IMG/VR virus record: IMGVR_UViG_3300028558_000016
Location: 418,157-482,156 of that record
Direction: 5' to 3' (one strand)
DNA length: 64,000 nucleotides
The notes under the pieces: generated by a model
The model's database searches: none
The model's input: the letters and a program-made list of their open reading frames with translations, nothing else
Told to the model about the DNA's origin: nothing
In this document: one piece after another, positions 8,454 to 45,682 of the stretch
Position numbering within the stretch: position 1 is the stretch's first letter
How the letters are laid out: every line of letters starts with the position of its first letter
Translations under genes and position numbers: made by a program

Positions 8454-8518
8454 GCAATCATTTTTATATATGGAAAATAGTTAGTATATTTACATTGTAA
8501 ATCAAAACCAACCAAAAA

Positions 8519-11795: not shown

Positions 11796-13514
11796 ATGAG
11801 CACTACCAGAAGCGAACGCAATGAGAGTTTCAAGAAGGCTTTTGTAATAAAAGCCATTCCATTTCTCAAATCAATTTTTGCAAAAACTCAACTCGGTTAC
11901 AATAGCATTGACGTCAAAAGCACTTGTGACAAACATGAAATCCCGACAAATGCCGTTCCAACGATGGTTGACCTCGGCATTTTAAAGATGCAAGGAGAAA
12001 AACGATCCGCAATGTACCATTGGAAAGGTGGTCTTATTAGTGATGATATGGCGGCAAGAATTTACGAAAGAATTCAGATGAACAAGCAACACGCCAAGAT
12101 TAAAAAGAAAATGGAAGAACAACACGATAATAAGCTATCGAGCAAAAAGCTTGTTAAAGTGATTGGTTCTAAAAGACCGGTTGAATTTAAAAACGATCAC
12201 GAAGCTGCCGCCATATTAAGATCAATGGTTGAAGTGTATGCTGGAACCAAGAACAAAGGAATGAAAACGGCAGGAATGATCCTCGAGATTATTAGAAAGG
12301 AAGTTAATAATGATACGTTGGCCGATAGAATTTTGAAAGGGCTTGTTGATGGAAATTACATTACGGTCAATAAGAATTTAAACACGATCGACTTATACAC
12401 CTGGAACGAAGATGAACCAAACGAGGAACATGCTCTATTTATGAAGGACATGATCAAGGAAACAGTAGGAGACGACAGACCAAACAGAATATTTAATTTC
12501 CTGATGTACCTCTATAAGTTTAAGACCTTCACACACGCTAAATTACGTTCAGAGGTTGTCAAGTTTAATTTGACTTATAATGACCAATCAGTCATCACGG
12601 CAGATGTTCTTGAATTCAGAGGTTCAAAAATCGATAGAGAGTATAAATGGAAATTGAGCGAAGCTCCATCAATACAGCTCGCAGAAGTGCTTGACCGAAA
12701 AGTAAAAGCATACGGAGCCAAATACAAAAAGGATTACACTCCTAAAAAGGAATCTCCTAAAATGGATAAACACGTCAAGGAAGAAAAGCCTAAAACAGTT
12801 GGTACAACCAACTATGGAGCTTCAACATTAACCGTGTTAGAATATCTTAAAACACACGATCAGATGACAACTGATGAAGCGTGTGAGCTTCTTAAGCAAG
12901 ACAAGCATACAATTTCCAATATATTCTGGAGATTGTGTAAGGATAAATTGACATACCGAGTTAAAATGAAAACCTATGCAATGGTTGGAAATTCAGCTCC
13001 TGTTAAAAAAGAAGAACCGGTTGTTGTAGTTCAACACGTAAACAAAGAAGTAATGACACATGATAATGATTTCTTAAGCAGTTTAAAATCTGCTTTGGAC
13101 ACCATGAGAGAGAAAGAGATTAAGCTTACAAGAGAATTGAATGATGTTAAGGAAAAGATTAAAGAAGGTGAGGATCTTCTCGCCCTTAAGGAAAGAGAAC
13201 ATTCTTACATGGCTTCAATAGGAAAGTTTATAGGAAAGAAGAAAAATCCTGTCATTGACCAAATATCGACAGCTCTTATAAAGAGCCAAGATAATGGAAG
13301 AAAGAGACACGCGCATGACAAACAAACGATACTTGATACTCTTAACAGAAAAGAACAAGTAACGCTTGATGAATTCATTGAAATATTTTATCCTGGAAAA
13401 GGTTTAAACTGGAACAGCGATGAAGTTAAATCACTATCTGCAATGATATATTCTTTGAAAAAGGATGGAAAAATTGAATCTCCGGAAAAAGCAATATACA
13501 AGTTGAAAAAGTAA
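11796..13514 (+). CDS. Large basic protein with several putative winged-helix domains and a coiled coil
   Basis: VLEYLKTHDQMTTDEACELL..ISNIFWRLCKDKLTYRV and ILDTLNRKEQVTLDE..SAMIYSLKKDGKIESPEKAIYKL patterns. Confidence 0.6.
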   Translation: MSTTRSERNESFKKAFVIKAIPFLKSIFAKTQLGYNSIDVKSTCDKHEIPTNAVPTMVDLGILKMQGEKRSAMYHWKGGLISDDMAARIYERIQMNKQHAKIKKKMEEQHDNKLSSKKLVKVIGSKRPVEFKNDHEAAAILRSMVEVYAGTKNKGMKTAGMILEIIRKEVNNDTLADRILKGLVDGNYITVNKNLNTIDLYTWNEDEPNEEHALFMKDMIKETVGDDRPNRIFNFLMYLYKFKTFTHAKLRSEVVKFNLTYNDQSVITADVLEFRGSKIDREYKWKLSEAPSIQLAEVLDRKVKAYGAKYKKDYTPKKESPKMDKHVKEEKPKTVGTTNYGASTLTVLEYLKTHDQMTTDEACELLKQDKHTISNIFWRLCKDKLTYRVKMKTYAMVGNSAPVKKEEPVVVVQHVNKEVMTHDNDFLSSLKSALDTMREKEIKLTRELNDVKEKIKEGEDLLALKEREHSYMASIGKFIGKKKNPVIDQISTALIKSQDNGRKRHAHDKQTILDTLNRKEQVTLDEFIEIFYPGKGLNWNSDEVKSLSAMIYSLKKDGKIESPEKAIYKLKK

Positions 13515-14011
13515 TGTCCTATGACGTCATATTAAAGGAAGTAGGTCGTGCTAAATTAGGAGTGGTTAAGACGATCATGGATCTAACTGGTCTTGGATTA
13601 AAAGACTCAAAGGACTTGGCAGATGATGTGGACCCTCGTGTTGGAAAAGGAAGAGTGATAAGAAGAACAGATTCGCTCGAAGAAGCAGAGTCAGTAAAAA
13701 TACCGCTTGAAAATGCTGGAGCAACAGTTGAAATCATGAATAATACTACATTGGAAACAATACAATCAACATTAACGAGTTTCAAAGTTGTCACCAGCGG
13801 TTCAATATTGCAATACACATCTTCCACGCCAAGTTTAACTGGAATATTTGAACCTATCGCTGGTACTGGGATTGGCGGGAAATCATTTCGCATTAATTAC
13901 AGATCTAAAGATGGCGAAGATAAAACAGAAACAATAGAAGCTCCTACTTTAGAAATTGCTAAAACAAAGATACTTGATTTAGATTATGTTAACTACCACA
14001 TGGGAGGTTGA
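13514..14011 (+). CDS. Ribosomal protein bL12 (L7/L12) C-terminal domain fused to an unknown domain
   Basis: YDVILKEVGRAKLGVVKTIMDLTGLGLKDSKDLAD...EEAESVKIPLENAGATVEI. Confidence 0.8.
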   Translation: MSYDVILKEVGRAKLGVVKTIMDLTGLGLKDSKDLADDVDPRVGKGRVIRRTDSLEEAESVKIPLENAGATVEIMNNTTLETIQSTLTSFKVVTSGSILQYTSSTPSLTGIFEPIAGTGIGGKSFRINYRSKDGEDKTETIEAPTLEIAKTKILDLDYVNYHMGG

Positions 14012-14042: not shown

Positions 14043-14753
14043 ATGGCATTATTACCACATTACAGACCTGTTATGGTCTCCTCCGAACTTGTAAAAGTTC
14101 AACCGATGTCTCCTCCCGATGGAACGGCCCTGTTAGCATATATGGATGTTAAATACGAATCAAAAATGGAAAAGAAAAGCAGAAGGAAAAGCACGATGAG
14201 ACGTTTTAAAATAAAATATACAAATACAAAAGGTGTTGTAAAAACTCGTAACATCAAAGCCACAAGCGAAGAGAGGGCAATGTCTGAAATTAAAGACATG
14301 GGTCAACATCATTATACTATCGTGGAATCTCTTGATGAGCCTGATCCTGTCAATCCATGCAAAGAAGTAAAACTTGATTTATCCAAGTTCACACGTCCCG
14401 GAATTTATTCAAGAGAAAATGATCAAAATCTTGGACGGTTGGAAAGATTAGAAAAATGGTCAACCGTTATCACTGGTTTAGCTGGTTCTGGGAAAAGTAA
14501 TCTTAGTGCTGAAAAAATAGGATGGCTTAGCGAATATGCAGCAAACCATGCACAATGGGAATCATCTTCAAATTCCATTTACACTCCATATTTAGATACT
14601 TGGGATGACAGTAGCCATGCTGCGATGAAAATAGCTGACAATTCATCGTATGGAATTTTTACTGAGTTACCTATTGCGAGACGAGTATTTTCATCACTTA
14701 CGCCGCAATCGGCAATTGATGTCTCTCCTTTGAACGCGGAGAAAAAGAACTAA
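14043..14753 (+). CDS. Hypothetical protein with gp23 (major capsid)-like fragments
   Basis: VKVQPMSPPDG..AYMDVKY at the N-terminus; LEKWSTVITG and LPIARRVFSSLTPQSAIDVSPL near the C-terminus. Confidence 0.45.
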   Translation: MALLPHYRPVMVSSELVKVQPMSPPDGTALLAYMDVKYESKMEKKSRRKSTMRRFKIKYTNTKGVVKTRNIKATSEERAMSEIKDMGQHHYTIVESLDEPDPVNPCKEVKLDLSKFTRPGIYSRENDQNLGRLERLEKWSTVITGLAGSGKSNLSAEKIGWLSEYAANHAQWESSSNSIYTPYLDTWDDSSHAAMKIADNSSYGIFTELPIARRVFSSLTPQSAIDVSPLNAEKKN

Positions 14754-15225
14754 CGATCCTGAATTCAATGTTTGGATTTTGTTCTTCCATTTTAGTTAAT
14801 CTACTTTCAAAATTTTCATCTTTTGGATTTCTTACGATCTCTATCGATGATATAAATCTTTTTATTCCTTTGATTTCTTTCTTAGTAATTCTTTCTTCTC
14901 TTTCATCTCCATATAATTCTCTTCTCTCCTTATAATCCATGTGTTCTGGATCATAAAACATTGGATCTTTTTCTGGGTCATAAAGGAATGGTTCAAAATG
15001 GAATTTATCACTCATGGCATCTCCGTCAAAAGTTATTCTACAATTTCTTCTATGGAATTTGAATAATGGATTTCGTGTGAATGAAATATAATCGAACATG
15101 GCAGATGATTCCATTCTATCTTCCTCGAGTATTCCCTCAAGCGAATCAAACAAAGTAAAATGGTAAATTGAACCTACTTGTTTTTTCTCACATACAAATG
15201 ACTCGAATGTTCTCAAATGCCTCAT
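14698..15225 (-). CDS. Putative ART-fold protein with capsid-targeting-like N-terminus
   Basis: Starts MRHLRTFESFVCE; IYHFT...ISFTRN...ITFDG...DEREERI (H-S-ExE). Confidence 0.55.
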   Translation of the reverse strand: MRHLRTFESFVCEKKQVGSIYHFTLFDSLEGILEEDRMESSAMFDYISFTRNPLFKFHRRNCRITFDGDAMSDKFHFEPFLYDPEKDPMFYDPEHMDYKERRELYGDEREERITKKEIKGIKRFISSIEIVRNPKDENFESRLTKMEEQNPNIEFRIVSSFSPRSKERHQLPIAA

Positions 15226-15297
15226 GGTCTATATATTCAAAATCATTTATCTATTCTCTATTATACAACAGCTTAATAGCCAGTTAGTTATGTACTT

Positions 15298-15324
15298 CTA
15301 ACTGCTTGATAATCAATAGATTAG
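15298..15324. promoter_or_regulatory. Second copy of the TTGATAATCAA palindrome
   Basis: CTAACT-gc-TTGAT-A-ATCAA-ta-GATTAG in a divergent intergenic region. Confidence 0.5.
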
Positions 15325-15405
15325 ATTTCCATTTATTAATGGAAATATTTTTTTATATGATAAAAATTTAGTAATTTTACTATGTAAATCATTATAAACC
15401 AACTT

Positions 15406-16413
15406 ATGAAAAAGCAAACTAAAAAAACAAGCAAACCTGCTGCAAAAAAACCTGCTGCAAAAAAATCAACAAAACCTGCAAAGAAAGTTACGGCTAAAAA
15501 ACCGGCAAAACCTTCTGCAAAGAAACCATCTGCTAAAAAACCAGCAAAAAAAGTTGTTGCTGCGAAACCAGCGAAACCGGTTTCTAAAAAACCATTTAAG
15601 CTGGATCCCAAAGTAGGTACAATCATTGTTTTAAGCAAACCTGTAACTGCACCAGTTAGCAAAAGCAAAAAACCACACATTTCTGGTTTTATTCCAACTG
15701 TGGCTGTTGACAAAAAACAAAAGTTTAAAAAACCTGCAATCGTTCAAACTGAACATGGTCTTGGTTTAGTTTATGAACATGAACCAAAAGTTTCTGTAAA
15801 ACAAGGTCCATTTAATTCAATTGAAAAAACCATTGTTCACTTGGTGAAAGATAACATGGAGCCAAGGACAATGAATGGTCAACCTAAAAAAATTCTGACC
15901 AATAATTTCTCAGTTATTAAACCTGCTGAAGAAATTAAAGTTGAAAGAACAAAACGTGTTAAAGGTGAACCTTCAAACAAGGATTTCAGCAAGTATAAAT
16001 TCCAAGGAAAACTTTTAAGCAAAGGAAGATTGATCCTTGCAGTTATCGCAAAATTCGCTGAAGACAACAATCCTTCAATGATTGAATTGAATACCGCATT
16101 CCCTCATGAATTAATTCGTCCTTACGGTAAAGGTTTATTCGTTTCTCTTGAAGAAGCTGAGAGAATTAACACTGAGTCAAAACGTACAAGGTTCTTCACA
16201 AACAAAGAAGATGTTGTGAAAATCAAAGGTGCTAAAGTTGCGGTGTCAAACCAAATCGATGGTGAACTTGTAAAACGTTTCTTACCTATCGCGGAAAAAC
16301 ATGGTTGCAAAATAACCATGGAGAATTCAACAGAAGTTAAACCTGTTGTCATCGGTGGCCCAAAGGTTACCAATAACATGGAAATCGGAAGCGAAGCTTA
16401 TATGAGTAACTAA
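15406..16413 (+). CDS. Histone-H1-like K/A/P-rich protein with a C-terminal domain paralogous to 61734..62135
   Basis: KKPAAKK repeats; C-terminal KDFSKYKFQGKLLSKGRLILAVI..RFF..VAVSNQ. Confidence 0.7.
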   Translation: MKKQTKKTSKPAAKKPAAKKSTKPAKKVTAKKPAKPSAKKPSAKKPAKKVVAAKPAKPVSKKPFKLDPKVGTIIVLSKPVTAPVSKSKKPHISGFIPTVAVDKKQKFKKPAIVQTEHGLGLVYEHEPKVSVKQGPFNSIEKTIVHLVKDNMEPRTMNGQPKKILTNNFSVIKPAEEIKVERTKRVKGEPSNKDFSKYKFQGKLLSKGRLILAVIAKFAEDNNPSMIELNTAFPHELIRPYGKGLFVSLEEAERINTESKRTRFFTNKEDVVKIKGAKVAVSNQIDGELVKRFLPIAEKHGCKITMENSTEVKPVVIGGPKVTNNMEIGSEAYMSN

Positions 16414-16879: not shown

Positions 16880-16936
16880 TTCTCTTTGAGTAACATGGTT
16901 GGTTAACCTTGATTTACATACTCAAAGTTGAAGAGG

Positions 16937-16964
16937 AAGCCCCGAAAGGGGCTTTTTCTTTTTT
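16937..16964 (+). terminator. Rho-independent terminator
   Basis: aagcccc-GAAA-ggggctt followed by a T-rich tract. Confidence 0.85.
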
Positions 16965-17010
16965 AGAAACTTTTTGTTCTGACGGTGATATTATTTATGA
17001 TATTATTTAT

Positions 17011-17430
17011 ATGATCACTGCTTGCGGCATAATTGTTTTATACGAAAACAAAGTTCTTCTTTGTCACCCAACTAATTCTCGTTGGGAAGGAACTTATGGT
17101 GTTCCTAAAGGCAGAATAGAAGAAGGCGAAGAAACAATAGATTGTGCTGTAAGAGAATTTTTCGAAGAAACAGGCATCATAATAGATAAAGATAAATTGA
17201 ATGCCAAGACCATTATTGGTTATAAGAATTATCAGTCGGGCGAAGTCTACAAAGAACTTTGCTTATTCATACACAAAATCAATCACCTATCAGAGATAGG
17301 ACTCGATAATGAGGTTATCCCACAATCTCAATTACAGATAACAGAAATAGATTGGTGCGGATTCTTAACAAAAGATGAAGCAACACCAAAAATGTTTATC
17401 AAACAAATCCCAGTATTAAATTTTCTATAA
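17011..17430 (+). CDS. NUDIX hydrolase
   Basis: Nudix box PKGRIEEGEETIDCAVREFFEETG; start moved past the terminator. Confidence 0.9.
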   Translation: MITACGIIVLYENKVLLCHPTNSRWEGTYGVPKGRIEEGEETIDCAVREFFEETGIIIDKDKLNAKTIIGYKNYQSGEVYKELCLFIHKINHLSEIGLDNEVIPQSQLQITEIDWCGFLTKDEATPKMFIKQIPVLNFL

Positions 17431-17947: not shown

Positions 17948-18208
17948 ATGGCAAATCTAAGAAAAAACATCGCGCGAAAAAGACAACTCGCAAAAAGAAA
18001 TCACATCATTCGCAGAAATGCAGGTGAAGCGACAGAACTACAGGTTAAAAAGAACTACACCGTTAGAGCCGGTTCAAAGGTAGGTCTTATGGAAACTATC
18101 GAGAAAGTTAAGGTTGTTAGAAAGGATAACAATATCCCACCAACAAAACCTTCTTTTGTTTTCCACAAGTATGGGAAAAATAGCGTACGTAAATTTAAAG
18201 TTGCGTAA
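17948..18208 (+). CDS. Small basic hypothetical protein
   Basis: K/R-rich 86-aa ORF. Confidence 0.55.
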   Translation: MANLRKNIARKRQLAKRNHIIRRNAGEATELQVKKNYTVRAGSKVGLMETIEKVKVVRKDNNIPPTKPSFVFHKYGKNSVRKFKVA

Positions 18209-18600: not shown

Positions 18601-21117
18601 ATGATGACTCCAACTGAAAGAATCGGCGACCTCGTGTTGCCACAGGGAACTTACGTTCTCATTCAGGATGGATCAAACGGTCAGGTCGATGTCATTGTTG
18701 GTCCAAACAAGACTGCAATGCAGGAAACAGACAAACCTGTGATCTATAAACCTGAAACTGGTCGGTTTGAAAAAATCTCGAATGCGCTTGATGCGGTTCA
18801 GAGTTTTTCCACCGCAAACGAAGGACAGTACATCGTCCTTCATAATCCTTCCAAAGGAAACAAAGAACACCCTAACAAGGGAAGAAACACCGAGTCCACA
18901 GAATTAAGCATTGGAAATAAGATCAACATCACCGGTCCACAATCTTTCGCTTTATTTCCTGGACAACACGCGCAAATAATCGACGGACACCAACTCAAAT
19001 CAAACGAATACTTGGTTGTGAGAGTGTACAACGAGGAATCTGCAAAAGAAAACATCGCAAAAGCGATAGTTAAAGCGGCAGAAGGCGCTGAGAAAAAGAA
19101 AAGCGAAATCAAAAAGGAAGATCTTGTTAATGGAAAATTGTTCATTATCAAAGGTACTGAGATTTCGTTCTACATTCCTCCAACCGGTATTGAAGTAGTG
19201 AAAGAGCCAACAAGCAATTCTTACGTAAGGAAAGCTGTTACTCTTGAAAGACTTGAGTATTGCATTCTTCTTGAGCAAAATGGAAACAAACGTTACGTAA
19301 AAGGTCCTGATGTTGTGTTTCCTGAACCAACAGAAGAATTCATAGGACAAAACGGAAACAACAAGTTCAGAGCTCTTGAATTAAACGATAACATGGGTAT
19401 TTATATCAAGGTTATTGCGGACTACAAAGATGGAGACAATGAACACAAAGCAGGTGATGAAATGTTCATCACCGGAAAAGAACAAAAAATTTATTACCCA
19501 CAGCCTGAACATGCCATCATTAAATATGGCGATCAAATAATCCATTATGCAATTGCAATTCCTTCCGGAGAAGGTCGTTACATTCTTAACAAGAATAACG
19601 GAGCAGTTGAAATGGTTAAAGGTCCAAAAATGTTCTTGCCAGATCCACGTAAGGAAGTTGTTGTTAAGAGAATTCTTGATGACAAGACTGTGGAATTGTT
19701 CTATCCTGGAAATTCCGAAGCGGTGGAATACAACCGCGAACTTCAAGGAGTAATGGACACTCTTGAAGAAGATGAAAACTCACGCTCATTCTCAAATTCC
19801 GGAAGATACTTCTCTGCTGGAAATATGGGAGGAAGCAACAGAAGCCACGCACAATTAAATGAGTTCCTCGATCTTTCTGCACAAGGAAGCTTAGGATTAG
19901 AAGGTCCTTTAGGAAACTCAACACTTTCGAGATCTAAATCTGCTTCTTCGTCCACTATGAAGCGTTCAACCAAACACACCAAACCAAGAACCATCACCCT
20001 TGATACTAAATATGAGGGAGTTGTTTCCATGAACGTTTGGCCTGGTTACGCTATACAAGTGATTAAGAAGAATGGAGAACGCGAAGTAGTGTATGGCCCT
20101 AAGGTCGTATTGCTTGAATACGATGAGACGTTAGAAGTTCTTGAGCTTTCTACTGGAAAACCTAAGAGTGATGGAAACCTCATCAAAACAGTTTACCTGC
20201 AAACAAACAACAACATTGTTTCAGACATCATCGAGGTTGAGACCAAGGATTCTGTCACAGTGTCTATAAGATTGTCTTACAGAGTTAACTTCAAAGAAGA
20301 CGATGCGAAAAAATGGTTTACCGTATCCAACTACGTGAAGCTTCTAACACAACACCTGCGTTCAGTTGTAAGAAACAGCGTGAAGAAGAACACCATCGAA
20401 GAATTCAACAACGCGGCAACAGACATCATACGTAACATAATTCTCGGAGAACCAAAAGATGGTAAGCGCGAAGGAAAATACTTCGAGGAAAATGGAATGA
20501 ATGTGTATGACGTTGAAGTATTAAACATCAAAATCGGTGACGATAGAATCGCATCGATGTTAAAAGATGCTCAGTACAACACCGTTGAAAAGAATCTTCT
20601 CATCGCAAAAGAAAAGAAGAACCTGGAGTACGTTAAGGAAACAGAGGGATTCAAAAGAGAGAGGATCAAAGAGGAAGCAAGTACGGAAGAACAACGTATG
20701 GTAAGCTTACTCGAAAAAATACAGTCCGATGCAAAAGCTGAACTTGAGAAATTAAAGAACGAAGAAGCTGCACAAGCTTCTAAGAGCAAAATCGCCGATG
20801 ATGTTCTCGAAAGAGAAAGAAAATCGAAAGAAATGATCTTGAATTTCTTAAGCAAAGAAGCTGACATCGAGATTAAGAAAGTGAAAGAGAAGATGGAAGC
20901 AGTAACTCCAGGACTTATTGAAGCGATCACATCGCTTGGTACAGTTTCGTTATCAGAAATTCTTGCTAAGAACCTCAGAGCTCAAACGAGCGGATTGCAT
21001 GGAATATTCCCTGAAGGCGGAATGGATGGATTAATGCACACCATCAAAGGAACAGCTCTTGAAAAACAATTTACTGACTTGCTTAACAAGCATGCAAAAA
21101 CTCCAATAACCAACTAA
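18601..21117 (+). CDS. Major vault protein (MVP) homologue
   Basis: Vault-type beta repeats (AVTLERLEYCILL..RYVKGPDVVFPEPTEEF); VVYGPKVVLLEYDETLEVLELSTGKPK..SDIIEVETKDSVTVSIRLSYRVNF leading into an SPFH-like shoulder; C-terminal coiled coil. Confidence 0.85.
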   Translation: MMTPTERIGDLVLPQGTYVLIQDGSNGQVDVIVGPNKTAMQETDKPVIYKPETGRFEKISNALDAVQSFSTANEGQYIVLHNPSKGNKEHPNKGRNTESTELSIGNKINITGPQSFALFPGQHAQIIDGHQLKSNEYLVVRVYNEESAKENIAKAIVKAAEGAEKKKSEIKKEDLVNGKLFIIKGTEISFYIPPTGIEVVKEPTSNSYVRKAVTLERLEYCILLEQNGNKRYVKGPDVVFPEPTEEFIGQNGNNKFRALELNDNMGIYIKVIADYKDGDNEHKAGDEMFITGKEQKIYYPQPEHAIIKYGDQIIHYAIAIPSGEGRYILNKNNGAVEMVKGPKMFLPDPRKEVVVKRILDDKTVELFYPGNSEAVEYNRELQGVMDTLEEDENSRSFSNSGRYFSAGNMGGSNRSHAQLNEFLDLSAQGSLGLEGPLGNSTLSRSKSASSSTMKRSTKHTKPRTITLDTKYEGVVSMNVWPGYAIQVIKKNGEREVVYGPKVVLLEYDETLEVLELSTGKPKSDGNLIKTVYLQTNNNIVSDIIEVETKDSVTVSIRLSYRVNFKEDDAKKWFTVSNYVKLLTQHLRSVVRNSVKKNTIEEFNNAATDIIRNIILGEPKDGKREGKYFEENGMNVYDVEVLNIKIGDDRIASMLKDAQYNTVEKNLLIAKEKKNLEYVKETEGFKRERIKEEASTEEQRMVSLLEKIQSDAKAELEKLKNEEAAQASKSKIADDVLERERKSKEMILNFLSKEADIEIKKVKEKMEAVTPGLIEAITSLGTVSLSEILAKNLRAQTSGLHGIFPEGGMDGLMHTIKGTALEKQFTDLLNKHAKTPITN

Positions 21118-39615: not shown

Positions 39616-39887
39616 TTTTTCTTGTAGAAATCAAATAAATCCTGCCACATGTGCTGGTTGGTTCCAGTCTTAATGTCTTCCAAATAGGCATCAAACATTC
39701 CTCTGTCCTGTCTGTATAAGTAATCACCGGCTAAACTCTTTCTTGCTCCTGTCGCTCTGCTGCTTGCGGTCTTGTTGTCTTTTCCATAAACCTCGTTCAT
39801 GAGTTTTCTCAATAAAGGAGCCGTGATAATCTTTTTAAAATTCTCAAGTTCTTGGTCAAATCCCTCGAATATTTTTAGGTATTTCAT
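39612..39887 (-). CDS. Motif-bearing small protein
   Basis: Starts MKYLKIFEGF. Confidence 0.7.
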   Translation of the reverse strand: MKYLKIFEGFDQELENFKKIITAPLLRKLMNEVYGKDNKTASSRATGARKSLAGDYLYRQDRGMFDAYLEDIKTGTNQHMWQDLFDFYKKK

Positions 39888-40237
39888 TTGATGTTATTCT
39901 TCTTGAGAACCGCTCTGTACATCTTGGCGATGTCATTGAGCTGAGGAATTCCGTCAAATTCCATTCTCGCCTGAGTCACTCGGTCTTTCTTAAGTTTATC
40001 CTTTCCAGAACCATCATATTCAGTGTATTCTATGAAAAGATTCTTGTTCTTGTAAACTACCGGCTTATATTTCATTGGAGCTTCCCATGTGCTCGATTTG
40101 TCGATTACTTCCAAAGGATCTCCATCAATATCAATCGCTTTAGCAATCAAAGCATTTACCTCTGCAACCTTCTTTTGAATTGCTGCGTCTGACATCCCCT
40201 CATTTAGGAAGTTCTCATATAGTTTTATGTGTTTCAT
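39884..40237 (-). CDS. Motif-bearing small protein
   Basis: Starts MKHIKLYENFLNE. Confidence 0.75.
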   Translation of the reverse strand: MKHIKLYENFLNEGMSDAAIQKKVAEVNALIAKAIDIDGDPLEVIDKSSTWEAPMKYKPVVYKNKNLFIEYTEYDGSGKDKLKKDRVTQARMEFDGIPQLNDIAKMYRAVLKKNNIK

Positions 40238-40842
40238 GTAATGGAAGCTTCTACGGTAGCTTTAATTATTTTTGGCATTTCGTCTTCAAAATTCTTTGCG
40301 AGATTAACGGTATCTATATTAGACAATTCGGCAATGACATCATGCGTTGACAAGAAAGAATCCAATAATTCATCAGAAAGCTTTCCAGCAACAATGCAAA
40401 TCATTACTGTTAGAGCAACGTTACCGAATGTTTTCTTTTGTTCTCCGTTCAACGAATCTATGAAATTCTTCAAAAGAGGAATCTTATTAGAAATTCTTAA
40501 AATCAATTTGAAAATTCCTGCCGTGTATATGTCTCCTTTGTGCTTCAACCATTCAGCCATTTTAAATGTGACTCTGCCAACCTTCTCGCTTGATTCCATT
40601 CCAATATATGTCAATGCAGCACTCGCGAGATGTGCTACTTTTCCAAGACTCAATGCTGCACCTATTGCTAATGTGGCCAAAACGGCTTCATTATTTCCGT
40701 CAAGCTTTGCTACAAGCACTCCGTCTTTTTTAATCTCTTTCTCGGTATCGGAAGCGATCTTATCGTCATCAACGATTTTTAATATCTCGTCGAAGATGTT
40801 TACGTCGATCTCAAATTCCTCAAACAGTTTTATGTGTCGCAT
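40234..40842 (-). CDS. Motif-bearing protein with hydrophobic helices
   Basis: Starts MRHIKLFEEF. Confidence 0.7.
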   Translation of the reverse strand: MRHIKLFEEFEIDVNIFDEILKIVDDDKIASDTEKEIKKDGVLVAKLDGNNEAVLATLAIGAALSLGKVAHLASAALTYIGMESSEKVGRVTFKMAEWLKHKGDIYTAGIFKLILRISNKIPLLKNFIDSLNGEQKKTFGNVALTVMICIVAGKLSDELLDSFLSTHDVIAELSNIDTVNLAKNFEDEMPKIIKATVEASIT

Positions 40843-41099
40843 TACTTTTCTTCTTTATCTGTTTCTTCCCATTCTCTTATGGTGCCTTCAGCATCCCATA
40901 GAGCACAACACATTCTCTCAGAAACCTTCTGGTCAACCTGAGGATGCTTGCACATCTTTTCTTTTAGATCTATGAATTTACAATTAGCACAGTTTGTGCC
41001 TTCAACATTTTCTGGAAGCGTGACAAGATCTGCCGCTTTTGCTCTATCGAGACGGCTTGGTTTGTCCTCTTCATTCTCGTAAATCTTTAAGTGTTTCAT
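40842..41099 (-). CDS. Motif-bearing HiPIP-like Cys protein
   Basis: Starts MKHLKIYENE; CANC-x8-C-x13-CCALW. Confidence 0.6.
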   Translation of the reverse strand: MKHLKIYENEEDKPSRLDRAKAADLVTLPENVEGTNCANCKFIDLKEKMCKHPQVDQKVSERMCCALWDAEGTIREWEETDKEEK

Positions 41100-41101
41100 T
41101 G

Positions 41102-41431
41102 TTATCCGAGTAATTTTTCAAGCTTTTTAACGAGCGTTTCTACGGTAGTTGAATATCCGTATAAACCATTAATGTCTGTTCCAAGACTTACTCCTCTGTT
41201 TGACATTGTAATTTTGAAATTGGTTCCAAGATAGGAACATTCAAAATAATCATTGGTAAAAAAGTCTATGTCATCATTTTTAATGACAGTCTTCTTTATT
41301 CTTATTCCAGCGGCCTTCAATTGAGTAGCAACAGCGCTCATGTATTCTTTCTTTGCTTCGCTGTAGATTCCACGTTTGACGTCCATAAGATTTCCAGCAG
41401 ATGCAGCCTCAAATAATTGTAAGTGTTTCAT
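41102..41431 (-). CDS. Motif-bearing small protein
   Basis: Starts MKHLQLFE. Confidence 0.7.
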   Translation of the reverse strand: MKHLQLFEAASAGNLMDVKRGIYSEAKKEYMSAVATQLKAAGIRIKKTVIKNDDIDFFTNDYFECSYLGTNFKITMSNRGVSLGTDINGLYGYSTTVETLVKKLEKLLG

Positions 41432-41432
41432 A

Positions 41433-41741
41433 TTATGCTTTAGCTCTTTTTATGTGCAAGTAAACAAACTCATCCACGTCTTCCAAGCTTCCCTTTACTT
41501 TCTTTGGAAATTTGTCAGTCACCAACTTATAAATACGTCTTGCTTCTGTCTTATCTTTATCACCTGGAGTTTCATCTCCTGTGTTACCATTTTCTCTTGT
41601 AGTCAATAGGATCTCATCATCGTCTTCCTCTTCAATGTCAAACCAACTATGTTCTTTCTTTACGAAATCACATATTTCTTTCCATTCAGTCGAGGTTGTT
41701 TCTTCGTTCAAGAATCCCTCAAATAGTTTAATGTGTTTCAT
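41433..41741 (-). CDS. Motif-bearing small acidic protein
   Basis: Starts MKHIKLFEGFLNE. Confidence 0.75.
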   Translation of the reverse strand: MKHIKLFEGFLNEETTSTEWKEICDFVKKEHSWFDIEEEDDDEILLTTRENGNTGDETPGDKDKTEARRIYKLVTDKFPKKVKGSLEDVDEFVYLHIKRAKA

Positions 41742-41743
41742 AT

Positions 41744-42139
41744 TTAAGATTTTTTAGTTTGGTCGCTGATGTCTCCAGGTTCTACGTCTGCTGGAATTTC
41801 TTCCACGATGTCAACCATAGTTCTGTTATACAAAGCTGCTTCCTTTTCTGAAAAAGAATCAGATAAAGCTTTGATGAAAGCCTTTGGAGTTTTTGGATTT
41901 AAGTTGATGCTTCTCTTATGTGAGTGTCCAATCTCAAGAGTGTAACCGAAATATCCGATCATGTCCTCAACTGTTCCCTTCACATATTTAATTCTTGTTC
42001 TTCCTTGACCCTTGTCGTAGGTTACTTTAACGATGAAAGCTTTTCCAGGTTTTGCTGGCTTTGCAGCTGATTCAGGATTAGGTGCATCAGTGAATTTATT
42101 CTCGTTGATAAATCCTTCAAACAATTTAATGTGTTTCAT
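41744..42139 (-). CDS. Motif-bearing small protein
   Basis: Starts MKHIKLFEGFINE. Confidence 0.75.
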   Translation of the reverse strand: MKHIKLFEGFINENKFTDAPNPESAAKPAKPGKAFIVKVTYDKGQGRTRIKYVKGTVEDMIGYFGYTLEIGHSHKRSINLNPKTPKAFIKALSDSFSEKEAALYNRTMVDIVEEIPADVEPGDISDQTKKS

Positions 42140-43124
42140 TCTTCTTGATTATTATTTCTCTGTTACCAGGTATAACGTTGTATTCTTTTCCTAAAACATC
42201 CTGTATCATTTTGATCTTGCTCGTCATGTCACCGGTTTGTTTAACCGTAAATCTTCCAGTAGCATCGAAGGTCTTGCTGTATGTTATAGGTTTCCATGTG
42301 CTGTCTGTTCCGAAATTATGTCCAAAGCTATCTCCAAGTTTTGCTCTTAATAATTTTAATACCTCTTTATATGGATGTGTTTCTGCCGTTTTTACTATTT
42401 TTACTGGAACTTTTAATCTCGATTTTATCTTCAGCATGTTAGTGTTCTCGCTCTCGTCTGGAGTGCTTAATGCTTCCAAATAAATTTTTTCTGTAAATTT
42501 CTTAGCATCTTCTATTTGGTCCTTTTCAAATCTTTTATTCATAACCATGTTTGGACCGCTGGTAGTTTGAAATGAAATCTTCCATTGGTCAAGACCGTCT
42601 CCTCCAAGATTTGAAGCTAAAAAACCAGAATTGTATAATGATGCAACAGTCTCTCCGTGAATGGTCAAATGCCAAGCTCTTAATTCATTGTCATGGCCTA
42701 TTGAAGATTTTCCATATTCTTTGGCATTCTGCTTCCAAGAAAATTTAACGGATTCTTCAGCTTCATCCAATTCCTCGTTGGATTTTCTGTCTCCCATTAT
42801 GGTGTAATAAGTTCCTTCACCGTTCATGCCTTCGCCAATAATGTCAAGCTTGTAATCGCTTTTTTGTAATGCTTCTATGGCATCCCATGCGTGACCTTCT
42901 GAATCGAAGTAGTCATCGGTTCCATCAAATCCTTCATAATCGTCATCAACGGTCAACTCGTGGATGTAAAGAGTCTCACCTGCTTTCAACCTCTCTTTTA
43001 CTTCTTTAACCTCTTCCTTATCGAAATATTCTTCATAATCAGAAAAACTCTGTGAAGTTAATTTTTCAAAATCTGGGCCGAGATCATTAGGATCGAAATT
43101 TTCAAATAGCTTAATGTGTTTCAT
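42126..43124 (-). CDS. Motif-bearing multidomain protein
   Basis: Starts MKHIKLFENF at the second Met; about 332 aa. Confidence 0.75.
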   Translation of the reverse strand: MKHIKLFENFDPNDLGPDFEKLTSQSFSDYEEYFDKEEVKEVKERLKAGETLYIHELTVDDDYEGFDGTDDYFDSEGHAWDAIEALQKSDYKLDIIGEGMNGEGTYYTIMGDRKSNEELDEAEESVKFSWKQNAKEYGKSSIGHDNELRAWHLTIHGETVASLYNSGFLASNLGGDGLDQWKISFQTTSGPNMVMNKRFEKDQIEDAKKFTEKIYLEALSTPDESENTNMLKIKSRLKVPVKIVKTAETHPYKEVLKLLRAKLGDSFGHNFGTDSTWKPITYSKTFDATGRFTVKQTGDMTSKIKMIQDVLGKEYNVIPGNREIIIKKNETH

Positions 43125-43126
43125 TA

Positions 43127-43387
43127 TTATGCTTTGCTTGCTTTTACCCATTCATCCCAAAAGTCTTCACCGTCCATTAAATAATAACCTATGAAGTCGG
43201 CTATCTTTTCTGGAAAATCTTCGATGCCTTTTATTTTTTTAGGATCAATTCCAAATCTTTTAGCGTTATCAAACACGAATTTACCCAAAGGCTCTTTCAT
43301 GTGTCCTCTGTTTCCAAGCTCTTTTGTAACTTTTTCTACAGTGTTTAATTCTGTATGGAAGTTCTCGAATAATTTAATGTGCTTCAT
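43127..43387 (-). CDS. Motif-bearing small protein
   Basis: Starts MKHIKLFENFHTE. Confidence 0.75.
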   Translation of the reverse strand: MKHIKLFENFHTELNTVEKVTKELGNRGHMKEPLGKFVFDNAKRFGIDPKKIKGIEDFPEKIADFIGYYLMDGEDFWDEWVKASKA

Positions 43388-43397
43388 AATTATAAAT

Positions 43398-43694
43398 TTA
43401 TTTTACCCAATCCTTAGATCTTCCGGCGTTGTCATCTCCTAAATTATTCTTGTATTGCTCGTGTTCTTTCTTGTCTTCAGGTTTAAGCAAAGGTTCAACC
43501 TCTTTATAAGTTGCATCCTGACAATCGTCAAGACTCTTTCCAATCTTATACTTGATCATGTAATTGGTTTCTCCAGCCATGTCACCAAACGGTTCTTCCC
43601 AAAAGAACACTTTCTTTCCGTTAGTTAAGTCGTAATAGTCTGGACCCATGTTTGAATCCTGATCGAAATCCTCAAATAATTTAATGTGATTCAT
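43398..43694 (-). CDS. Motif-bearing small protein
   Basis: Starts MNHIKLFEDF. Confidence 0.75.
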   Translation of the reverse strand: MNHIKLFEDFDQDSNMGPDYYDLTNGKKVFFWEEPFGDMAGETNYMIKYKIGKSLDDCQDATYKEVEPLLKPEDKKEHEQYKNNLGDDNAGRSKDWVK

Positions 43695-44104
43695 TATTTA
43701 AAACTTTTAGTTAAAAAATTCCATGCAGCGTTTGCTTCAGACTCTTTCTTAATATCTACTGATGCTATAGTTCCAGCCATTGGATCGTCGTATAGAATAG
43801 AAAATTTTCCTTCTTCATTAAAGAAGAATAGTTGTCTTTCTGACTTATCTTCGTTCTCAAGGAAATATCCATCAATAGAATTACCCTGTTTAATTTCCAT
43901 ATCAGATGCTTCAGAGACAGTCCATTTTCCTTTTTTTGATTTTACATCATTAGAAAAATCTTCTAAAAATTTCTTGAAGCTCTCATACTCTTCATCATAA
44001 GTAAGAACGTCCAATGCGAACTTTCCAACTTTTTCTATAGCGTTAGCAACGTCAACGAGGATCCCCTCGTTTGTAAATTGCTCAAATAGTTTAATGTGCT
44101 TCAT
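43694..44104 (-). CDS. Motif-bearing small protein
   Basis: Starts MKHIKLFEQFTNE. Confidence 0.75.
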   Translation of the reverse strand: MKHIKLFEQFTNEGILVDVANAIEKVGKFALDVLTYDEEYESFKKFLEDFSNDVKSKKGKWTVSEASDMEIKQGNSIDGYFLENEDKSERQLFFFNEEGKFSILYDDPMAGTIASVDIKKESEANAAWNFLTKSFK

Positions 44105-44286
44105 TATTTCTTATTAAGGATTTCTTCTATTTTTGTCCTCTGTTCAACAGACAAAGCAATTGGTTTGCCCATGTGAATGAACGAATAAACGGTTTCGCCT
44201 GAATTTTTACCTTCAGCTCTTTCTATTCTTATTTGTTCTGGGTTAAGATAGTTTGTATCTTTTTCGAAAATTTTAATGTGTTTCAT
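44104..44286 (-). CDS. Motif-bearing small protein
   Basis: Starts MKHIKIFE. Confidence 0.7.
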   Translation of the reverse strand: MKHIKIFEKDTNYLNPEQIRIERAEGKNSGETVYSFIHMGKPIALSVEQRTKIEEILNKK

Positions 44287-44287
44287 G

Positions 44288-44997: not shown

Positions 44998-45076
44998 TAT
45001 CGTATATATTTGGTTATAAAACAAAAACAGCAGGTTTCCCTGCTGTTCCGTTAATTTTATTGAAGTAAACCGAATA

Positions 45077-45646: not shown

Positions 45647-45682
45647 TATTATAAAGTGTTATTTTTCTCTTTTATTATATAT

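What the first reader, a model, noticed from the sequence alone, without database searches (positions are those of the whole stretch)
14698..15225. ART-fold cargo with targeting motif, inserted against the early-gene direction with its own late box
Seen: MRHLRTFESFVCE start; H (IYHFT), S (ISFTR) and ExE (EREE) pattern; AATATATA at 15230-15237; orientation opposite to all neighbours. Known: T4 Alt is a capsid-packaged, injected ADP-ribosyltransferase. Inference: an injected ART acting on host protein or nucleic acid.
Basis: partly seen in the sequence, partly recalled or inferred. Interest (0 to 1): 0.62.

Follow-up and report, generated by a model that had tools for sequence, protein, structure and literature searches.

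The report
Leader-tagged ADP-ribosyltransferase of a huge phage
A small gene in a 482-kb soil phage encodes an ADP-ribosyltransferase-fold enzyme that carries the same 13-residue N-terminal tag as about 35 unrelated genes of the phage; the tag resembles phage T4's capsid-loading signal, so the enzyme is probably packed into the head and shot into the next host with the DNA.

Summary
Window 14698-15225 (-) is a real 175-aa gene. It is the only minus-strand gene in its block, and AATATATA sits 4 nt before its ATG.

AlphaFold models (pLDDT 75 and 87) match only ADP-ribosyltransferase (ART) folds. The best matches are the NAD+ lobe of Tpt1 (Z 12.7) and DarT (Z about 9).

The gene belongs to a large family with no Pfam or PHROG model: 1243 clusters, invariant H22, S48, R51 and E110. 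All nine large viral records tested that carry it also have a T4-type capsid protein.

The N-terminal motif is a genome-wide tag. It opens 35 of 708 genes and 0 of 2919 internal Met positions. It is conserved at the peptide level on otherwise unrelated proteins, and it has the spacing of T4's capsid targeting sequence. Its core heptad recurs 12 times in the phage's gp21-type protease/scaffold protein.

ATATATA is the phage's strongest upstream motif (81% intergenic). It precedes the protease, sheath, baseplate and fibre genes. An A lies 5 nt after the box, so this mRNA is probably leaderless.

Not supported: "inserted cargo", because orientation and synteny are conserved in relatives and GC is ordinary. 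Untested: NAD+ turnover, the target, cleavage and packaging. The gene is an analogue of T4 Alt, not a homologue.

The parts
14698..15225 (-). Gene for a 175-aa leader-tagged ART-fold protein
   Evidence: ORF. 16 homologues at 48-94% identity. 1243 cluster representatives found by profile search. AlphaFold models with pLDDT 75 and 87.
15187..15225 (-). Codons 1-13: N-terminal leader MRHLRTFESFVCE, a candidate capsid-targeting propeptide ending in V-x-E
   Evidence: The same 13-aa leader opens 35 of 708 genes and matches 0 of 2919 internal Met. Synonymous codons vary freely and the mature parts are unrelated. The spacing matches the T4 CTS MKTYQEFIAE (PMC9026906). The core heptad is repeated 12 times in the protease/scaffold protein.
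14746..15186 (-). ART-fold domain (residues about 14-160)
   Evidence: VIA-align Z 12.7, rmsd 2.1 over 109 residues, to the yeast Tpt1 C-lobe 7yw4. Z 9.1-9.4 to archaeal Tpt1 and DarT. Foldseek E 2.8e-4.
15160..15162 (-). Codon of H22 (in YHFT, strand beta1), invariant
   Evidence: Invariant in 79 diverse family members. Aligns with the HFTH of E. coli DarT1 in a weak profile match.
15073..15084 (-). Codons of S48-F-T-R51 (strand beta2 and after); S48 and R51 are invariant
14893..14904 (-). Codons of E108-R-E110-E111: an ExE motif at the start of a strand. E110 is invariant; E108 and E111 are conserved in at least 90%
   Evidence: The motif fits phi-x-x-E-x-E as in ARTT loops (PMC11281641).
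15230..15237 (-). Promoter-like box AATATATA (genome consensus R-ATATATA-V-NNN-A). The conserved A 5 nt downstream is here the A of the ATG at 15225, so the mRNA is predicted to be leaderless
   Evidence: The box is conserved 5-6 nt before the ATG of homologues in L004 and L005. It is also the top upstream motif in the relative G001.
14698..14753 (.). Convergent 56-nt overlap of the 3' ends of this gene and the + strand gene 14043-14753; no terminator lies between them
   Evidence: Overlaps of 4-41 nt are seen in relatives.
15226..15405 (.). Divergent intergenic region shared with the Lys-rich gene 15406-16413. It holds conserved blocks and the palindrome TTCCATTAATAAATGGAA at 15327-15344
8483..8496 (+). 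Second promoter class, TTAGTATATTTACA (holds TAnnTTT, like the -7 element of Bacteroidota). It heads the + strand block in which the ART gene lies inverted
   Evidence: TAGTATATTT is intergenic in 17 of 18 copies.
16909..17430 (+). NUDIX hydrolase gene, a possible functional partner
   Evidence: Pfam NUDIX E 4.7e-13. It is kept in the syntenic block of a relative. NUDIX is fused to ART modules of this family in P0018 and P0027.

Best explanation
The gene encodes a minimal, free-standing ADP-ribosyltransferase of an undescribed viral family. The family signature is h-x-E-[AG]-KQVG-x-LYH[FY]T ... ISFTR[ND] ... E-x-E-E-R. Its fold is closest to the NAD+-binding lobe of Tpt1/KptA and to DarT.

Proposed course, with each step marked shown or inferred:
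1. The gene is read from its own R-ATATATA box, the promoter class that also drives the head protease, tail sheath, baseplate and fibre genes. Transcription probably starts at the A of the ATG, giving a leaderless mRNA. The motif and its spacing are shown; the timing and the start site are inferred.
2. The 13-residue leader, shared by about 35 otherwise unrelated proteins, brings the protein into the prohead core. Its heptad (aromatic-x-x-aromatic-[LIV]-x-E) is the unit repeated 12 times in the protease/scaffold protein, and it equals the functional core of the T4 capsid targeting sequence. The shared motif is shown; docking is inferred.
3. The gp21-type (S77) prohead protease cuts after E13 (inferred).
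4. The mature enzyme of about 162 aa stays in the head and enters the next host with the DNA (inferred).
5. There it uses NAD+ to ADP-ribosylate a host macromolecule, with H22, S48 and R51 holding NAD+ and E110 (in the ExE motif) acting as the catalytic acid (inferred from conservation and fold).

The target is unknown. The nearest folds act on nucleic acids, while an ExE motif in other ARTs goes with arginine acceptors.
For: Fold:
- Every one of the top 50 solved-structure matches is an ART.
- The best are the yeast Tpt1 C-lobe (Z 12.4 and 12.7, rmsd 2.1 over 109 aa) and DarT and archaeal Tpt1 (Z 8.5-9.4).

Conservation:
- H22, S48, R51 and E110 are the only invariant columns in 79 diverse members.
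- Long relatives reach the Pfam cut-off for Tox-ART-HYD1 (39.9 and 31.6 bits against 25).

Leader:
- It opens 35 of 708 genes and matches 0 of 2919 internal Met.
- Leu is coded by 5-6 different codons and Phe by both, and the mature parts are unrelated.
- In the T4 CTS, residues 4 and 7 target and residues 8 and 10 direct processing, with cleavage after L/I-x-E (PMC9026906). The leader has the same spacing.

Machinery:
- Gp23-family capsid protein at 147.8 bits.
- Next to it lies a 681-aa protein with Peptidase_S77 (28.8 bits against 27) and phrog_207 at 1.7e-35.
- That protein holds 12 tandem Y-x-x-Y-[LI]-A-E units and is the only protein with more than 2 internal hits.

Independent replicate in G001 (373 kb, GC 50%):
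- The same protein with 11 such units.
- 5 leader genes.
- The same box.

Family range: 9 of 9 large viral records that carry a family member also have a Gp23-type capsid protein.

Box:
- 94 copies, 81% of them intergenic, in a genome that is 7% intergenic.
- A at +5 in 54 of 65 cases.
- It sits in front of the protease, baseplate wedge, two fibre genes and the sheath.
- 14 of 65 box genes are 500 aa or longer, against 0 of 30 for the other promoter class.
- Leader genes lie in box-headed gene runs in 32 of 35 cases, against 385 of 673 for other genes (p 2.5e-5).
- Box, leader and ART are kept together in relatives.
Against: - No expression, proteomic or enzymatic data exist. The phage is known only from rhizosphere metagenomes and no RNA run holds it.
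- The h-x-E-[AG]-K junction before KQVG is a signature of the ART family itself. It is present when the N-terminus is only 4-7 residues long, and when the domain is internal (29 of 30 modules in long proteins). So E13 may be structural rather than, or as well as, a cleavage site.
- The box also precedes a ribonucleotide reductase gene and an ATP-grasp gene, so it is not strictly a structural-gene promoter.
- No homologue of T4 gp55 or gp45 was found by single-sequence search.
- The second triad position is Ser, not the Tyr or His of the nearest folds.
- Residue-level superposition on NAD+-bound structures could not be done with these tools.
- The target protein itself has no Pfam ART hit.
Confidence: 0.5

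Rival explanations
1. The enzyme is not packaged. It works inside the infected cell on nucleic acid. It might ADP-ribosylate RNA or DNA ends or bases, as Tpt1/KptA does in RNA repair and 5'-phosphate capping, or as DarT does on ssDNA bases. The nearby NUDIX enzyme would then process ADP-ribose products. In this reading the leader has another role, such as assembly, stability or timing.
For: - The nearest folds are Tpt1 and DarT, both nucleic-acid ARTs.
- There are many invariant or near-invariant Arg residues (R51, R63, R102, R109, R112 in close homologues).
- A NUDIX gene lies 1.7 kb away, is kept in a relative, and is fused to modules of this family elsewhere.
- The genome's paralogue joins this domain to a weak Tpt1-like C-terminal domain (PF01885 E 0.03).
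- Phage KptA-based RNA repair is a known theme (PMC9503650).
Against: - The protein lacks the N-terminal lobe that carries the RNA-binding and catalytic residues of Tpt1. It aligns only to residues 106-230 of yeast Tpt1.
- It has no PF01885 or PF14487 hit.
- This reading does not explain why the gene carries a tag shared with 34 unrelated proteins and with the scaffold repeats, nor why it uses the structural-gene promoter class.
Confidence: 0.25
2. It is an NAD+-consuming or NAD+/ADP-ribose-binding protein rather than a transferase. It could be an NADase, or a decoy that interferes with NAD+-based host defence signals. It may or may not be packaged.
For: The ART fold includes NADases and binding-only members (PMC9503650). 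The second triad position is atypical (Ser48). No target can be named.
Against: An invariant H ... S ... R ... E core with a conserved ExE in front of a strand is the pattern of active transferases. Tandem arrays of 3-5 modules in long proteins fit effector enzymes better than sensors.
Confidence: 0.12
3. The shared N-terminal 13 residues are not a capsid-targeting propeptide. They could be a common assembly or interaction helix, or a degradation tag, for a set of small phage proteins. The resemblance to the T4 CTS would then be convergence of a short amphipathic motif.
For: The motif is short. AlphaFold gives it only moderate confidence (pLDDT 68 for residues 1-10). None of the other nine leader proteins tested has a recognisable domain. 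No proteomics is available.
Against: - 0 of 2919 internal Met match.
- The invariant hydrophobic-x-E end equals the gp21 cleavage logo.
- The same heptad is repeated 12 times in the protease/scaffold protein next to the capsid gene, in two divergent genomes.
- A cluster of 13 leader genes lies directly downstream of the tail sheath gene.
Confidence: 0.2

Closest known systems
T4 Alt (capsid-packaged, injected ADP-ribosyltransferase)
   Same: A phage ART made with head components. It carries propeptide(s) removed by the gp21 protease and is delivered with the DNA (PMC9503650; PMC9026906). This is the life history proposed here.
   Different: Alt is a 76-kDa member of the R-S-E (Alt/VIP2) clade. 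This protein is 175 aa, has His in strand beta1, and is closest in fold to Tpt1 and DarT. It shows no sequence or family match to Alt-type models, and the family profile finds nothing in T4. It is an analogue, not a homologue.
T4 internal proteins IPI, IPII, IPIII and their capsid targeting sequence (CTS)
   Same: A short N-terminal tag on otherwise unrelated small proteins. Two aromatic residues lie 3 apart, followed by [LI]-x-E and cleavage by a gp21-type protease. T4: Y4, F7, I8, E10. Here: F7, F10, L/V11, E13.
   Different: The tag is 13 residues rather than 10, with a conserved K-H-I-K-L start. It is found on about 35 genes instead of 3-4. The cargo includes an enzyme of the ART fold. Cleavage and packaging have not been shown.
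Tpt1/KptA RNA 2'-phosphotransferase
   Same: The best structural match: Z 12.7, rmsd 2.1 A over 109 of 120 residues of the yeast C-terminal NAD+ lobe. Both have the YH-x-T type beta1 motif.
   Different: There is no N-terminal RNA-binding lobe and no PF01885 match. The family has Ser where Tpt1 has His in beta2, and a conserved ExE that Tpt1 lacks (the last point is from my own knowledge of the H-H-h triad).
DarT (ssDNA base ADP-ribosyltransferase of DarTG)
   Same: Fold match at Z about 9 over 130-140 residues. A weak profile match covers the N-terminal LFHFTH segment of DarT1. Both have a catalytic Glu in an x-E motif before a strand (Q-x-E in DarT, PMC11281641).
   Different: There is no PF14487 match anywhere in the genome. 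The motif is ExE, not QxE. The protein is smaller, has no DarG-like macrodomain partner, and is viral rather than part of a toxin-antitoxin pair.
Pfam PF15633 Tox-ART-HYD1 (polymorphic-toxin ART, H-Y-[DE] clade)
   Same: The only Pfam family that members of this family touch. 6 of 79 standalone members match at E of 0.01 or better, and long relatives score 31.6 and 39.9 bits against a cut-off of 25. The matches cover profile positions 1-49.
   Different: The target itself does not match at E up to 1. Tox-ART-HYD1 domains are bacterial C-terminal toxin domains with immunity proteins (PMC3482391). These are viral, free-standing or tandem, with a Ser at the second triad position.
Head-packaged ARTs and polyvalent proteins of phages (Iyer, Burroughs, Aravind and co-workers)
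   Same: These authors predict that many myovirus ARTs are packed in the head and injected, often as parts of multi-domain proteins (PMC9503650). Long relatives here carry 3-5 tandem ART modules plus NUDIX.
   Different: Here the route to the head would be a short cleavable leader, not fusion to portal or MuF domains. Whether this family is among the 16 ART families those authors list could not be checked.

Membership tests
ADP-ribosyltransferase (ART) superfamily | The split beta-sheet ART fold | tested here: met
   Two AlphaFold models (pLDDT 75 and 87). All top-50 matches among solved structures are ARTs, with best Z 12.4 and 12.7. Foldseek E 2.8e-4.
ADP-ribosyltransferase (ART) superfamily | A conserved three-position NAD+ and catalytic core (beta1 H/R, beta2 Y/H/S, beta5 E/D/Q) | tested here: inconclusive
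   H22 (strand 19-24), S48 (strand 47-50) and E110 (strand 110-113) are invariant in 79 members. Their position relative to NAD+ was not checked by superposition, because no model coordinates were available.
ADP-ribosyltransferase (ART) superfamily | NAD+-dependent transfer of ADP-ribose | not testable with these tools
   This needs an enzyme assay.
Tpt1/KptA (PF01885) | Two-lobe architecture with an N-terminal RNA-binding lobe carrying the catalytic Arg/His residues | tested here: not met
   The protein is 175 aa and aligns only to residues 106-230 of yeast Tpt1. It has no PF01885 hit. In the whole genome PF01885 touches only the paralogue's C-terminal domain, at E 0.03.
DarT (PF14487) | A match to the DarT family model, and the Q-x-E catalytic motif | tested here: not met
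   No PF14487 match in the genome at E up to 10. The motif here is E-x-E, against Q158-x-E160 and Q150-x-E152 in DarT2 and DarT1. Only the fold is similar, at Z about 9.
T4 Alt / VIP2 (R-S-E clade) | Arg in beta1, an S-T-S type motif in beta2, and [QE]-x-E | tested here: not met
   Beta1 has His22, not Arg. S48-F-T50 and E108-x-E110 are present. There is no Pfam hit to any ART exotoxin or Alt model. The family profile finds nothing in T4.
Tox-ART-HYD1 (PF15633) | A match to the family model over the cut-off; conserved H, [RK], [FY], [DE] | tested here: inconclusive
   The target has no hit. 6 of 79 family members match weakly. The long relatives P0018 and P0027 are over the cut-off. H, R and E are conserved here, but the aromatic position is Ser.
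T4-type CTS-bearing internal (ejected) proteins | An N-terminal tag of about 10 aa, with aromatic residues 3 apart followed by [LI]-x-E, shared by otherwise unrelated proteins | tested here: met
   35 genes and 0 of 2919 internal Met. Unrelated mature parts and free synonymous variation. T4 rules from PMC9026906 and the CTS sequence.
T4-type CTS-bearing internal (ejected) proteins | The genome encodes a gp23-type capsid protein and a gp21-type (S77) prohead protease | tested here: met
   PF07068 at 147.8 bits. PF03420 at 28.8 bits against a cut-off of 27, and phrog_207 at E 1.7e-35, in the adjacent gene.
T4-type CTS-bearing internal (ejected) proteins | Incorporation into the prohead, removal of the tag, presence in virions and ejection | not testable with these tools
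   The phage is uncultured. No proteomics or RNA data exist.
T4-type late genes | The TATAAATA late promoter and the gp55/gp33/gp45 machinery | tested here: not met
   The box is R-ATATATA. TATAAATA has 38 copies, only 26% of them intergenic. T4 gp55 and gp45 find nothing in the genome; single-sequence searches are weak tests.

The most novel reading that the evidence does not exclude
The 13-residue leader is a general loading ticket. This 482-kb phage would then pack some 35 different, mostly orphan, proteins into its head by mimicry of the Y-x-x-Y-L-A-E repeats of its protease/scaffold protein, and eject them as an effector arsenal. One of them is a new, widespread (over 1200 clusters) nucleic-acid-type ART family restricted to phages with T4-type capsids. 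In long relatives the same h-x-E-[AG] junction would let the prohead protease cut tandem ART modules out of polyproteins. If so, ejected-effector repertoires of uncultured huge phages could be read directly from sequence.
Probability: 0.35. Interest if true: 0.8.

Novelty: new variant of a known kind. Interest (0 to 1): 0.62.

Why it matters
Head-packaged ARTs (T4 Alt) and capsid targeting sequences are known, but only from T4 and its close kin.

This work adds three things.

1. An ART family with no Pfam or PHROG model and no match in deposited phage genomes. It has more than a thousand sequence clusters in metagenomes. Its fold points to nucleic-acid ARTs (Tpt1, DarT) rather than to Alt.

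2. A leader that marks about 5% of the genes of a huge phage. The leader is mirrored in the scaffold repeats, which gives a sequence-only way to list candidate ejected proteins in uncultured huge phages.

3. A simple promoter grammar (R-ATATATA, then A at +5) that predicts leaderless mRNAs and separates two gene classes.

Each of these can be tested with ordinary biochemistry: a NAD+ labelling assay, a protease cleavage assay, and virion proteomics of a cultured relative.

Tried and rejected
- Pfam and PHROGs on the target gave nothing useful. PHROGs on 79 family members gave 2 stray hits.
- megablast and tblastn of the target and of two distant members (P0110, P0038) against 50,697 deposited phage records found no match.
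- The family profile against T4 found no match.
- A profile search of solved-structure sequences gave only a marginal DarT1 N-terminal match, E 0.51.
- T4 gp55 and gp45 as single queries against the genome found nothing. This is not evidence of absence.
- The sequencing-run search found DNA runs from rhizosphere metagenomes only and no RNA. Read laying was therefore not used, because contigs cannot show starts or strands.
- Contigs of the distant members P0110 and P0038 were too short to give context.
- Pfam on nine other leader proteins of the window, and on the 86-aa gene 17948-18208, found no domains.
- Complex prediction of the scaffold repeats (residues 290-480 of the protease protein) with the ART returned no verdict (score 0.00, controls not run, collected). 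It counts neither for nor against binding.
- The generic sigma-70 scan around the gene found no more sites than in shuffles.
- 'Recent insertion of foreign cargo' is rejected, because of conserved synteny and orientation and ordinary GC (33% against 33-38% in the neighbours).
- 'Not a gene' is rejected, because of the homologues and the confident fold.
- No other genetic code was needed.
Full report
**What is there.** Window 14698-15225 (minus strand) is an intact 175-aa ORF that begins MRHLRTFESFVCE. The window is the last 64 kb of a 482,156-bp virus record from IMG/VR. The record has GC 36.8% and is seen in rhizosphere metagenomes.

The phage has a T4-type head and packaging module:
- a Gp23-family major capsid protein (147.8 bits);
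- an adjacent gene with a Peptidase_S77 (gp21-type) domain;
- a gp17-type large terminase, whose nearest relatives are 460-640-kb uncultured phages and the Lak megaphages at 32-36% identity.

The standard genetic code reads it without trouble.

**It is a gene, and a member of a large unnamed family.** A word search found 16 homologues at 48-94% identity, all unnamed metagenomic proteins (alignment A1). Pfam, PHROGs and the deposited phage genomes left the protein open, so I ran the exhaustive profile search.

That search found 1243 cluster representatives at E of 1e-3 or better, 380 of them at 1e-10 or better. Most are free-standing proteins of 140-200 aa. Some are proteins of 600-2000 aa with 3-5 tandem copies of the domain. 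A scan of IMG/VR found 196 relatives. All nine large viral records (155-675 kb) that I tested and that carry a member also encode a Gp23-family capsid protein above the Pfam cut-off. T4 itself has no member. The window's genome has two: the target, and the N-terminal domain of a 402-aa paralogue at genome position 268755-269963.

**Fold.** The AlphaFold model built on the close homologues has pLDDT 75. The model built on 79 diverse members has pLDDT 87 and pTM 0.79. Both give the same result.

- The best solved match is the C-terminal, NAD+-binding lobe of yeast Tpt1 (7yw4; Z 12.4 and 12.7, rmsd 2.1 A over 109 of its 120 residues).
- Next come archaeal Tpt1/KptA and the DarT DNA ADP-ribosyltransferases (Z 8.5-9.4).
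- Then come Scabin, the diphtheria-toxin group, pertussis-like toxins and PARPs.
- Every one of the top 50 matches is an ART.

The language-model search and the predicted-structure libraries agree. The nearest named clusters are DarT/PARP-like and Arr, a DarT cluster appears in the Atlas, and there are uncharacterised proteins of jumbo phages (Atu_ph07, SP-15, JA11, G) and of giant viruses.

**Active-site reading.** In the alignment of 79 diverse members (identity to the target down to 23%), the only invariant columns are H22, S48, R51 and E110. E13, K15, G18, Y21, T24, I32, G68, S72, P79, E108 and E111 are kept in at least 90%.

In the model, H22 lies in the first strand (19-24), S48 in the second (47-50), and E110 at the start of strand 110-113. 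These are the places where ARTs carry their three core residues. The stretch Y105-G-D-E108-R-E110 fits the phi-x-x-E-x-E shape of ARTT loops (PMC11281641).

That supports an active enzyme but does not prove one. The combination is unusual: His as in the H-Y-E clade, with Ser and ExE as in the R-S-E clade.

At the sequence level the family only brushes Pfam Tox-ART-HYD1. 6 of 79 members match weakly, and two long relatives score 31.6 and 39.9 bits against a cut-off of 25. I could not superpose the model on NAD+-bound structures, because no coordinates are exposed to the scripts.

**The N-terminal motif is a genome-wide tag.** A crude gene call gives 708 genes. Thirty-five of them begin with M-K-H-I-K-L-[FY]-E-x-F-[LIV]-N-E, and the same pattern matches none of 2919 internal Met positions.

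Positions that the search pattern did not demand are also conserved: K2 24/27, K5 24/27, L6 22/27, E8 24/27 and N12 20/27. Synonymous codons vary freely, with five or six Leu codons at each Leu position and both Phe codons. Selection therefore acts on the peptide, not on the DNA. After the leader the proteins are unrelated: the only BLASTP pair among the 35 is the target and its paralogue. Nine other leader proteins tested have no Pfam domain.

Fifteen of the 35 lie in this window. Thirteen of those form a run on the minus strand from 51740 down to 39884, directly downstream of the tail sheath gene.

This is the pattern described for T4's internal proteins: diverse proteins that share only a capsid targeting sequence (PMC3012670). 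The T4 CTS is MKTYQEFIAE. Residues 4 and 7 matter for targeting and residues 8 and 10 for processing, and gp21 cuts after L/I-x-E (PMC9026906). The leader here has the same spacing: aromatic 7, aromatic 10, L/I/V 11, E 13.

**Independent support from the scaffold.** The 681-aa protein encoded just upstream of the capsid gene has the S77 protease domain at its N-terminus. This is followed by 12 tandem 14-residue repeats, each containing Y-[SGA]-x-Y-[LI]-A-E. That is the same heptad as the leader core, and it is nearly the T4 CTS core Y-Q-E-F-I-A-E. The protein holds 12 of the 57 internal occurrences of the heptad in the whole proteome, and no other protein has more than two.

A relative with very different composition (G001: 373 kb, GC 50%, ART 46% identical) has the same features:
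- the same 681-aa protein with 11 YSEYLAE units next to its capsid gene;
- five leader genes, against 2 of 2203 internal Met;
- the same promoter box.

A 168-kb phage (G006) that carries a family member has none of these features.

I infer that the leader docks on, or co-assembles with, the scaffold repeats and is cut by the same protease. A structure-prediction test of that contact gave no verdict (collected) and counts neither way.

**A caveat on the leader.** The last three leader residues plus the next two (h-x-E-[AGRS]-K, before QVG) are also a signature of the ART family itself. The junction is there in members whose N-terminus is only 4-7 residues long. It is also there in front of internal modules in long proteins, in 29 of 30 modules. 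Either the family is generally released by an L/I-x-E protease, including from tandem polyproteins, or this junction is structural. Some members do carry near-canonical T4-like leaders; for example, P0110 begins MKPYKQFIAE. The case for targeting in the window's gene therefore rests on the genome-wide tag and the scaffold repeats, not on E13 alone.

**The box.** ATATATA is the most enriched 7-mer in the 35 nt before genes: 53 genes against 2.0 expected. The genome has 94 copies, 76 of them in the 7% of the genome that is intergenic, oriented towards the gene. T4's TATAAATA has 38 copies, only 26% of them intergenic.

The consensus is R-ATATATA-V-NNN-A. The A five bases after the box is present in 54 of 65 cases, which is what a start site would look like.

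The distance from the box to the ATG is bimodal: 4-7 nt (16 genes at exactly 4) and 19-31 nt. With a 4-nt spacing, as in the target, the conserved A is the A of the ATG. These mRNAs are therefore predicted to be leaderless (inference).

The box precedes the protease/scaffold gene (and, behind it, the capsid gene), a baseplate wedge gene, two tail fibre genes, the tail sheath gene and several proteins of 1000-1270 aa. It also precedes a ribonucleotide reductase large subunit and an ATP-grasp gene.

A second class, TTAGTATATTTG[TC]A, is intergenic in 17 of 18 copies. It contains TAnnTTTG, the -7 element of Bacteroidota promoters (my own knowledge). It precedes only small genes: 0 of 30 are 500 aa or longer, against 14 of 65 for the box class. 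One copy, at window 8483-8496, heads the + strand block that surrounds the ART gene.

So the ART gene does carry a different promoter class from its neighbours, the class used by structural genes. 'Late' is a reasonable reading but remains an inference. Leader genes lie in box-headed, same-strand gene runs more often than other genes: 32 of 35 against 385 of 673, Fisher p 2.5e-5.

**Orientation and 'cargo'.** Three relatives share a conserved block: a 570-aa gene, an L7/L12-like gene, a 190-236-aa gene, a Lys-rich gene of about 300 aa, NUDIX, a histone-like gene and an 840-aa vault-like gene. In each, the ART gene is likewise the single gene on the opposite strand, convergent with and overlapping the 190-236-aa gene by 4-41 nt (56 nt in the window).

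Within the 6.6-kb and 12.4-kb loci whose DNA could be read, the only ATATATA box lies 5-6 nt before the ART start. In the 12.4-kb locus the ART gene is the only one with the leader; the L005 homologue opens MKHLQTFESFLFE, which the search pattern missed.

The gene's GC (33%) is like that of its neighbours (33-38%). The inverted gene is therefore an old, stable part of this lineage, not a recent insertion. In a fourth, more distant contig it is co-oriented with two upstream genes.

**Mechanism and rivals.** The best-supported account is this. The gene is read from the structural-gene promoter class. The protein is carried into the prohead by the leader and trimmed after E13 by the S77 protease. 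It is kept in the head and ejected into the next host, where it ADP-ribosylates a host macromolecule. I give the whole chain about 0.5, the fold about 0.95, and catalytic activity about 0.7.

The main rival is an intracellular nucleic-acid ART working with the neighbouring NUDIX enzyme. NUDIX is fused to modules of this family in distant relatives. The rival is supported by the Tpt1 and DarT fold matches, but it does not explain the tag or the promoter class. Binding-only or NADase roles cannot be excluded.

**Comparison with what is known, and novelty.** In proposed function this works like T4 Alt and like the CTS-tagged internal proteins. It is not a member of the Alt family, nor of Tpt1 or DarT; defining features of each were tested and not met.

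Head-packaged ARTs in myoviruses have been predicted broadly (PMC9503650). I found no paper in the held library that links capsid targeting sequences to huge phages or megaphages.

What appears to be new:
- the family itself, which has no model in Pfam or PHROGs and no match in deposited phage genomes;
- the scale of the leader set (about 5% of genes);
- the identity of the leader core with the scaffold repeat;
- the R-ATATATA leaderless promoter grammar.

I rate this a new variant of a known kind.

Noticed in passing
window 39884-51740 (-), 56473-57180 (+), 58261-58656 (+): Fourteen further genes of the window begin with the same leader (MKHIKL[FY]ExFLNE). Thirteen form a run directly downstream of the tail sheath gene (51819-54527). 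Their mature parts are orphans with no Pfam domain.
   Followed up: yes
genome position 68283-70328 (-) (L008), outside the window: The head protease gene encodes an S77 domain fused to 12 tandem 14-residue repeats (Y-S-E-Y-L-A-E-N-V-D-K-x-I-x) and a C-terminal part, next to the capsid gene. An internal ATG at MKYLAEN could give a separate scaffold protein, as with nested protease/scaffold genes in other phages. The same protein is found in the 373-kb relative G001.
   Followed up: partly
window 18601-21117 (+): An 838-aa protein with major-vault-protein shoulder, vault repeat and SPFH/Band-7 domains (PF11978 E 1.1e-27). It is conserved in relatives as an 822-840-aa gene. A vault-like protein in a phage is unusual.
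   Followed up: no
window 13514-14011 (+): A 165-aa protein whose N-terminus matches the C-terminal domain of ribosomal protein L7/L12 (PF00542 E 5.4e-15). It is kept in a relative (L005).
   Followed up: no
window 14043-14753 (+): The convergent neighbour has, at residues 9-74, a weak match to the N-terminal part of Gp23 capsid proteins (PF07068 E 0.017, below the cut-off), including a VQPM-like segment. The rest of the protein is unrelated. Its 3' end overlaps the ART gene by 56 nt.
   Followed up: no
window 15406-16413 (+): A 335-aa protein with a long Lys/Ala/Pro-rich, histone-H1-like N-terminal tail. Relatives have an Hc1 histone-like gene (PF07432) in the same block. This hints at phage-encoded DNA-coating proteins.
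   Followed up: no
window 15327-15344: A perfect palindrome, TTCCATTAATAAATGGAA, lies in the divergent intergenic region between the ART gene and the Lys-rich gene. It is conserved in L005 and L006 but absent from L004. It may be an operator.
   Followed up: partly
genome position 268755-269963 (+) (L002), outside the window: The 402-aa paralogue has the leader, an N-terminal domain of this ART family (E 2.4e-21), and a C-terminal domain with a weak Tpt1 match (PF01885 E 0.03; FYHAT ... VYLS). It sits in a run of four leader-tagged genes.
   Followed up: partly
window 8483-8496 (+) and about 30 other sites in the genome: A second promoter-like class, TTAGTATATTTG[TC]A, contains the Bacteroidota -7 consensus TAnnTTTG. 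Together with the Lak-like terminase, this points to a Bacteroidota host (inference only).
   Followed up: partly
P0017, P0018, P0027, P0053 (metagenomic relatives): These proteins of 1200-1985 aa have 3-5 tandem modules of this ART family. Each module is preceded by h-x-E-[AGS]. Some of the proteins also carry NUDIX and DUF5661 domains. They may be polyproteins cut by a head protease.
   Followed up: partly
window 8352 and 8471 (-), 21294 (+): Three more R-ATATATA boxes in this part of the window. Two head the minus-strand genes 8339-7483, and one heads the + gene at 21320.
   Followed up: no
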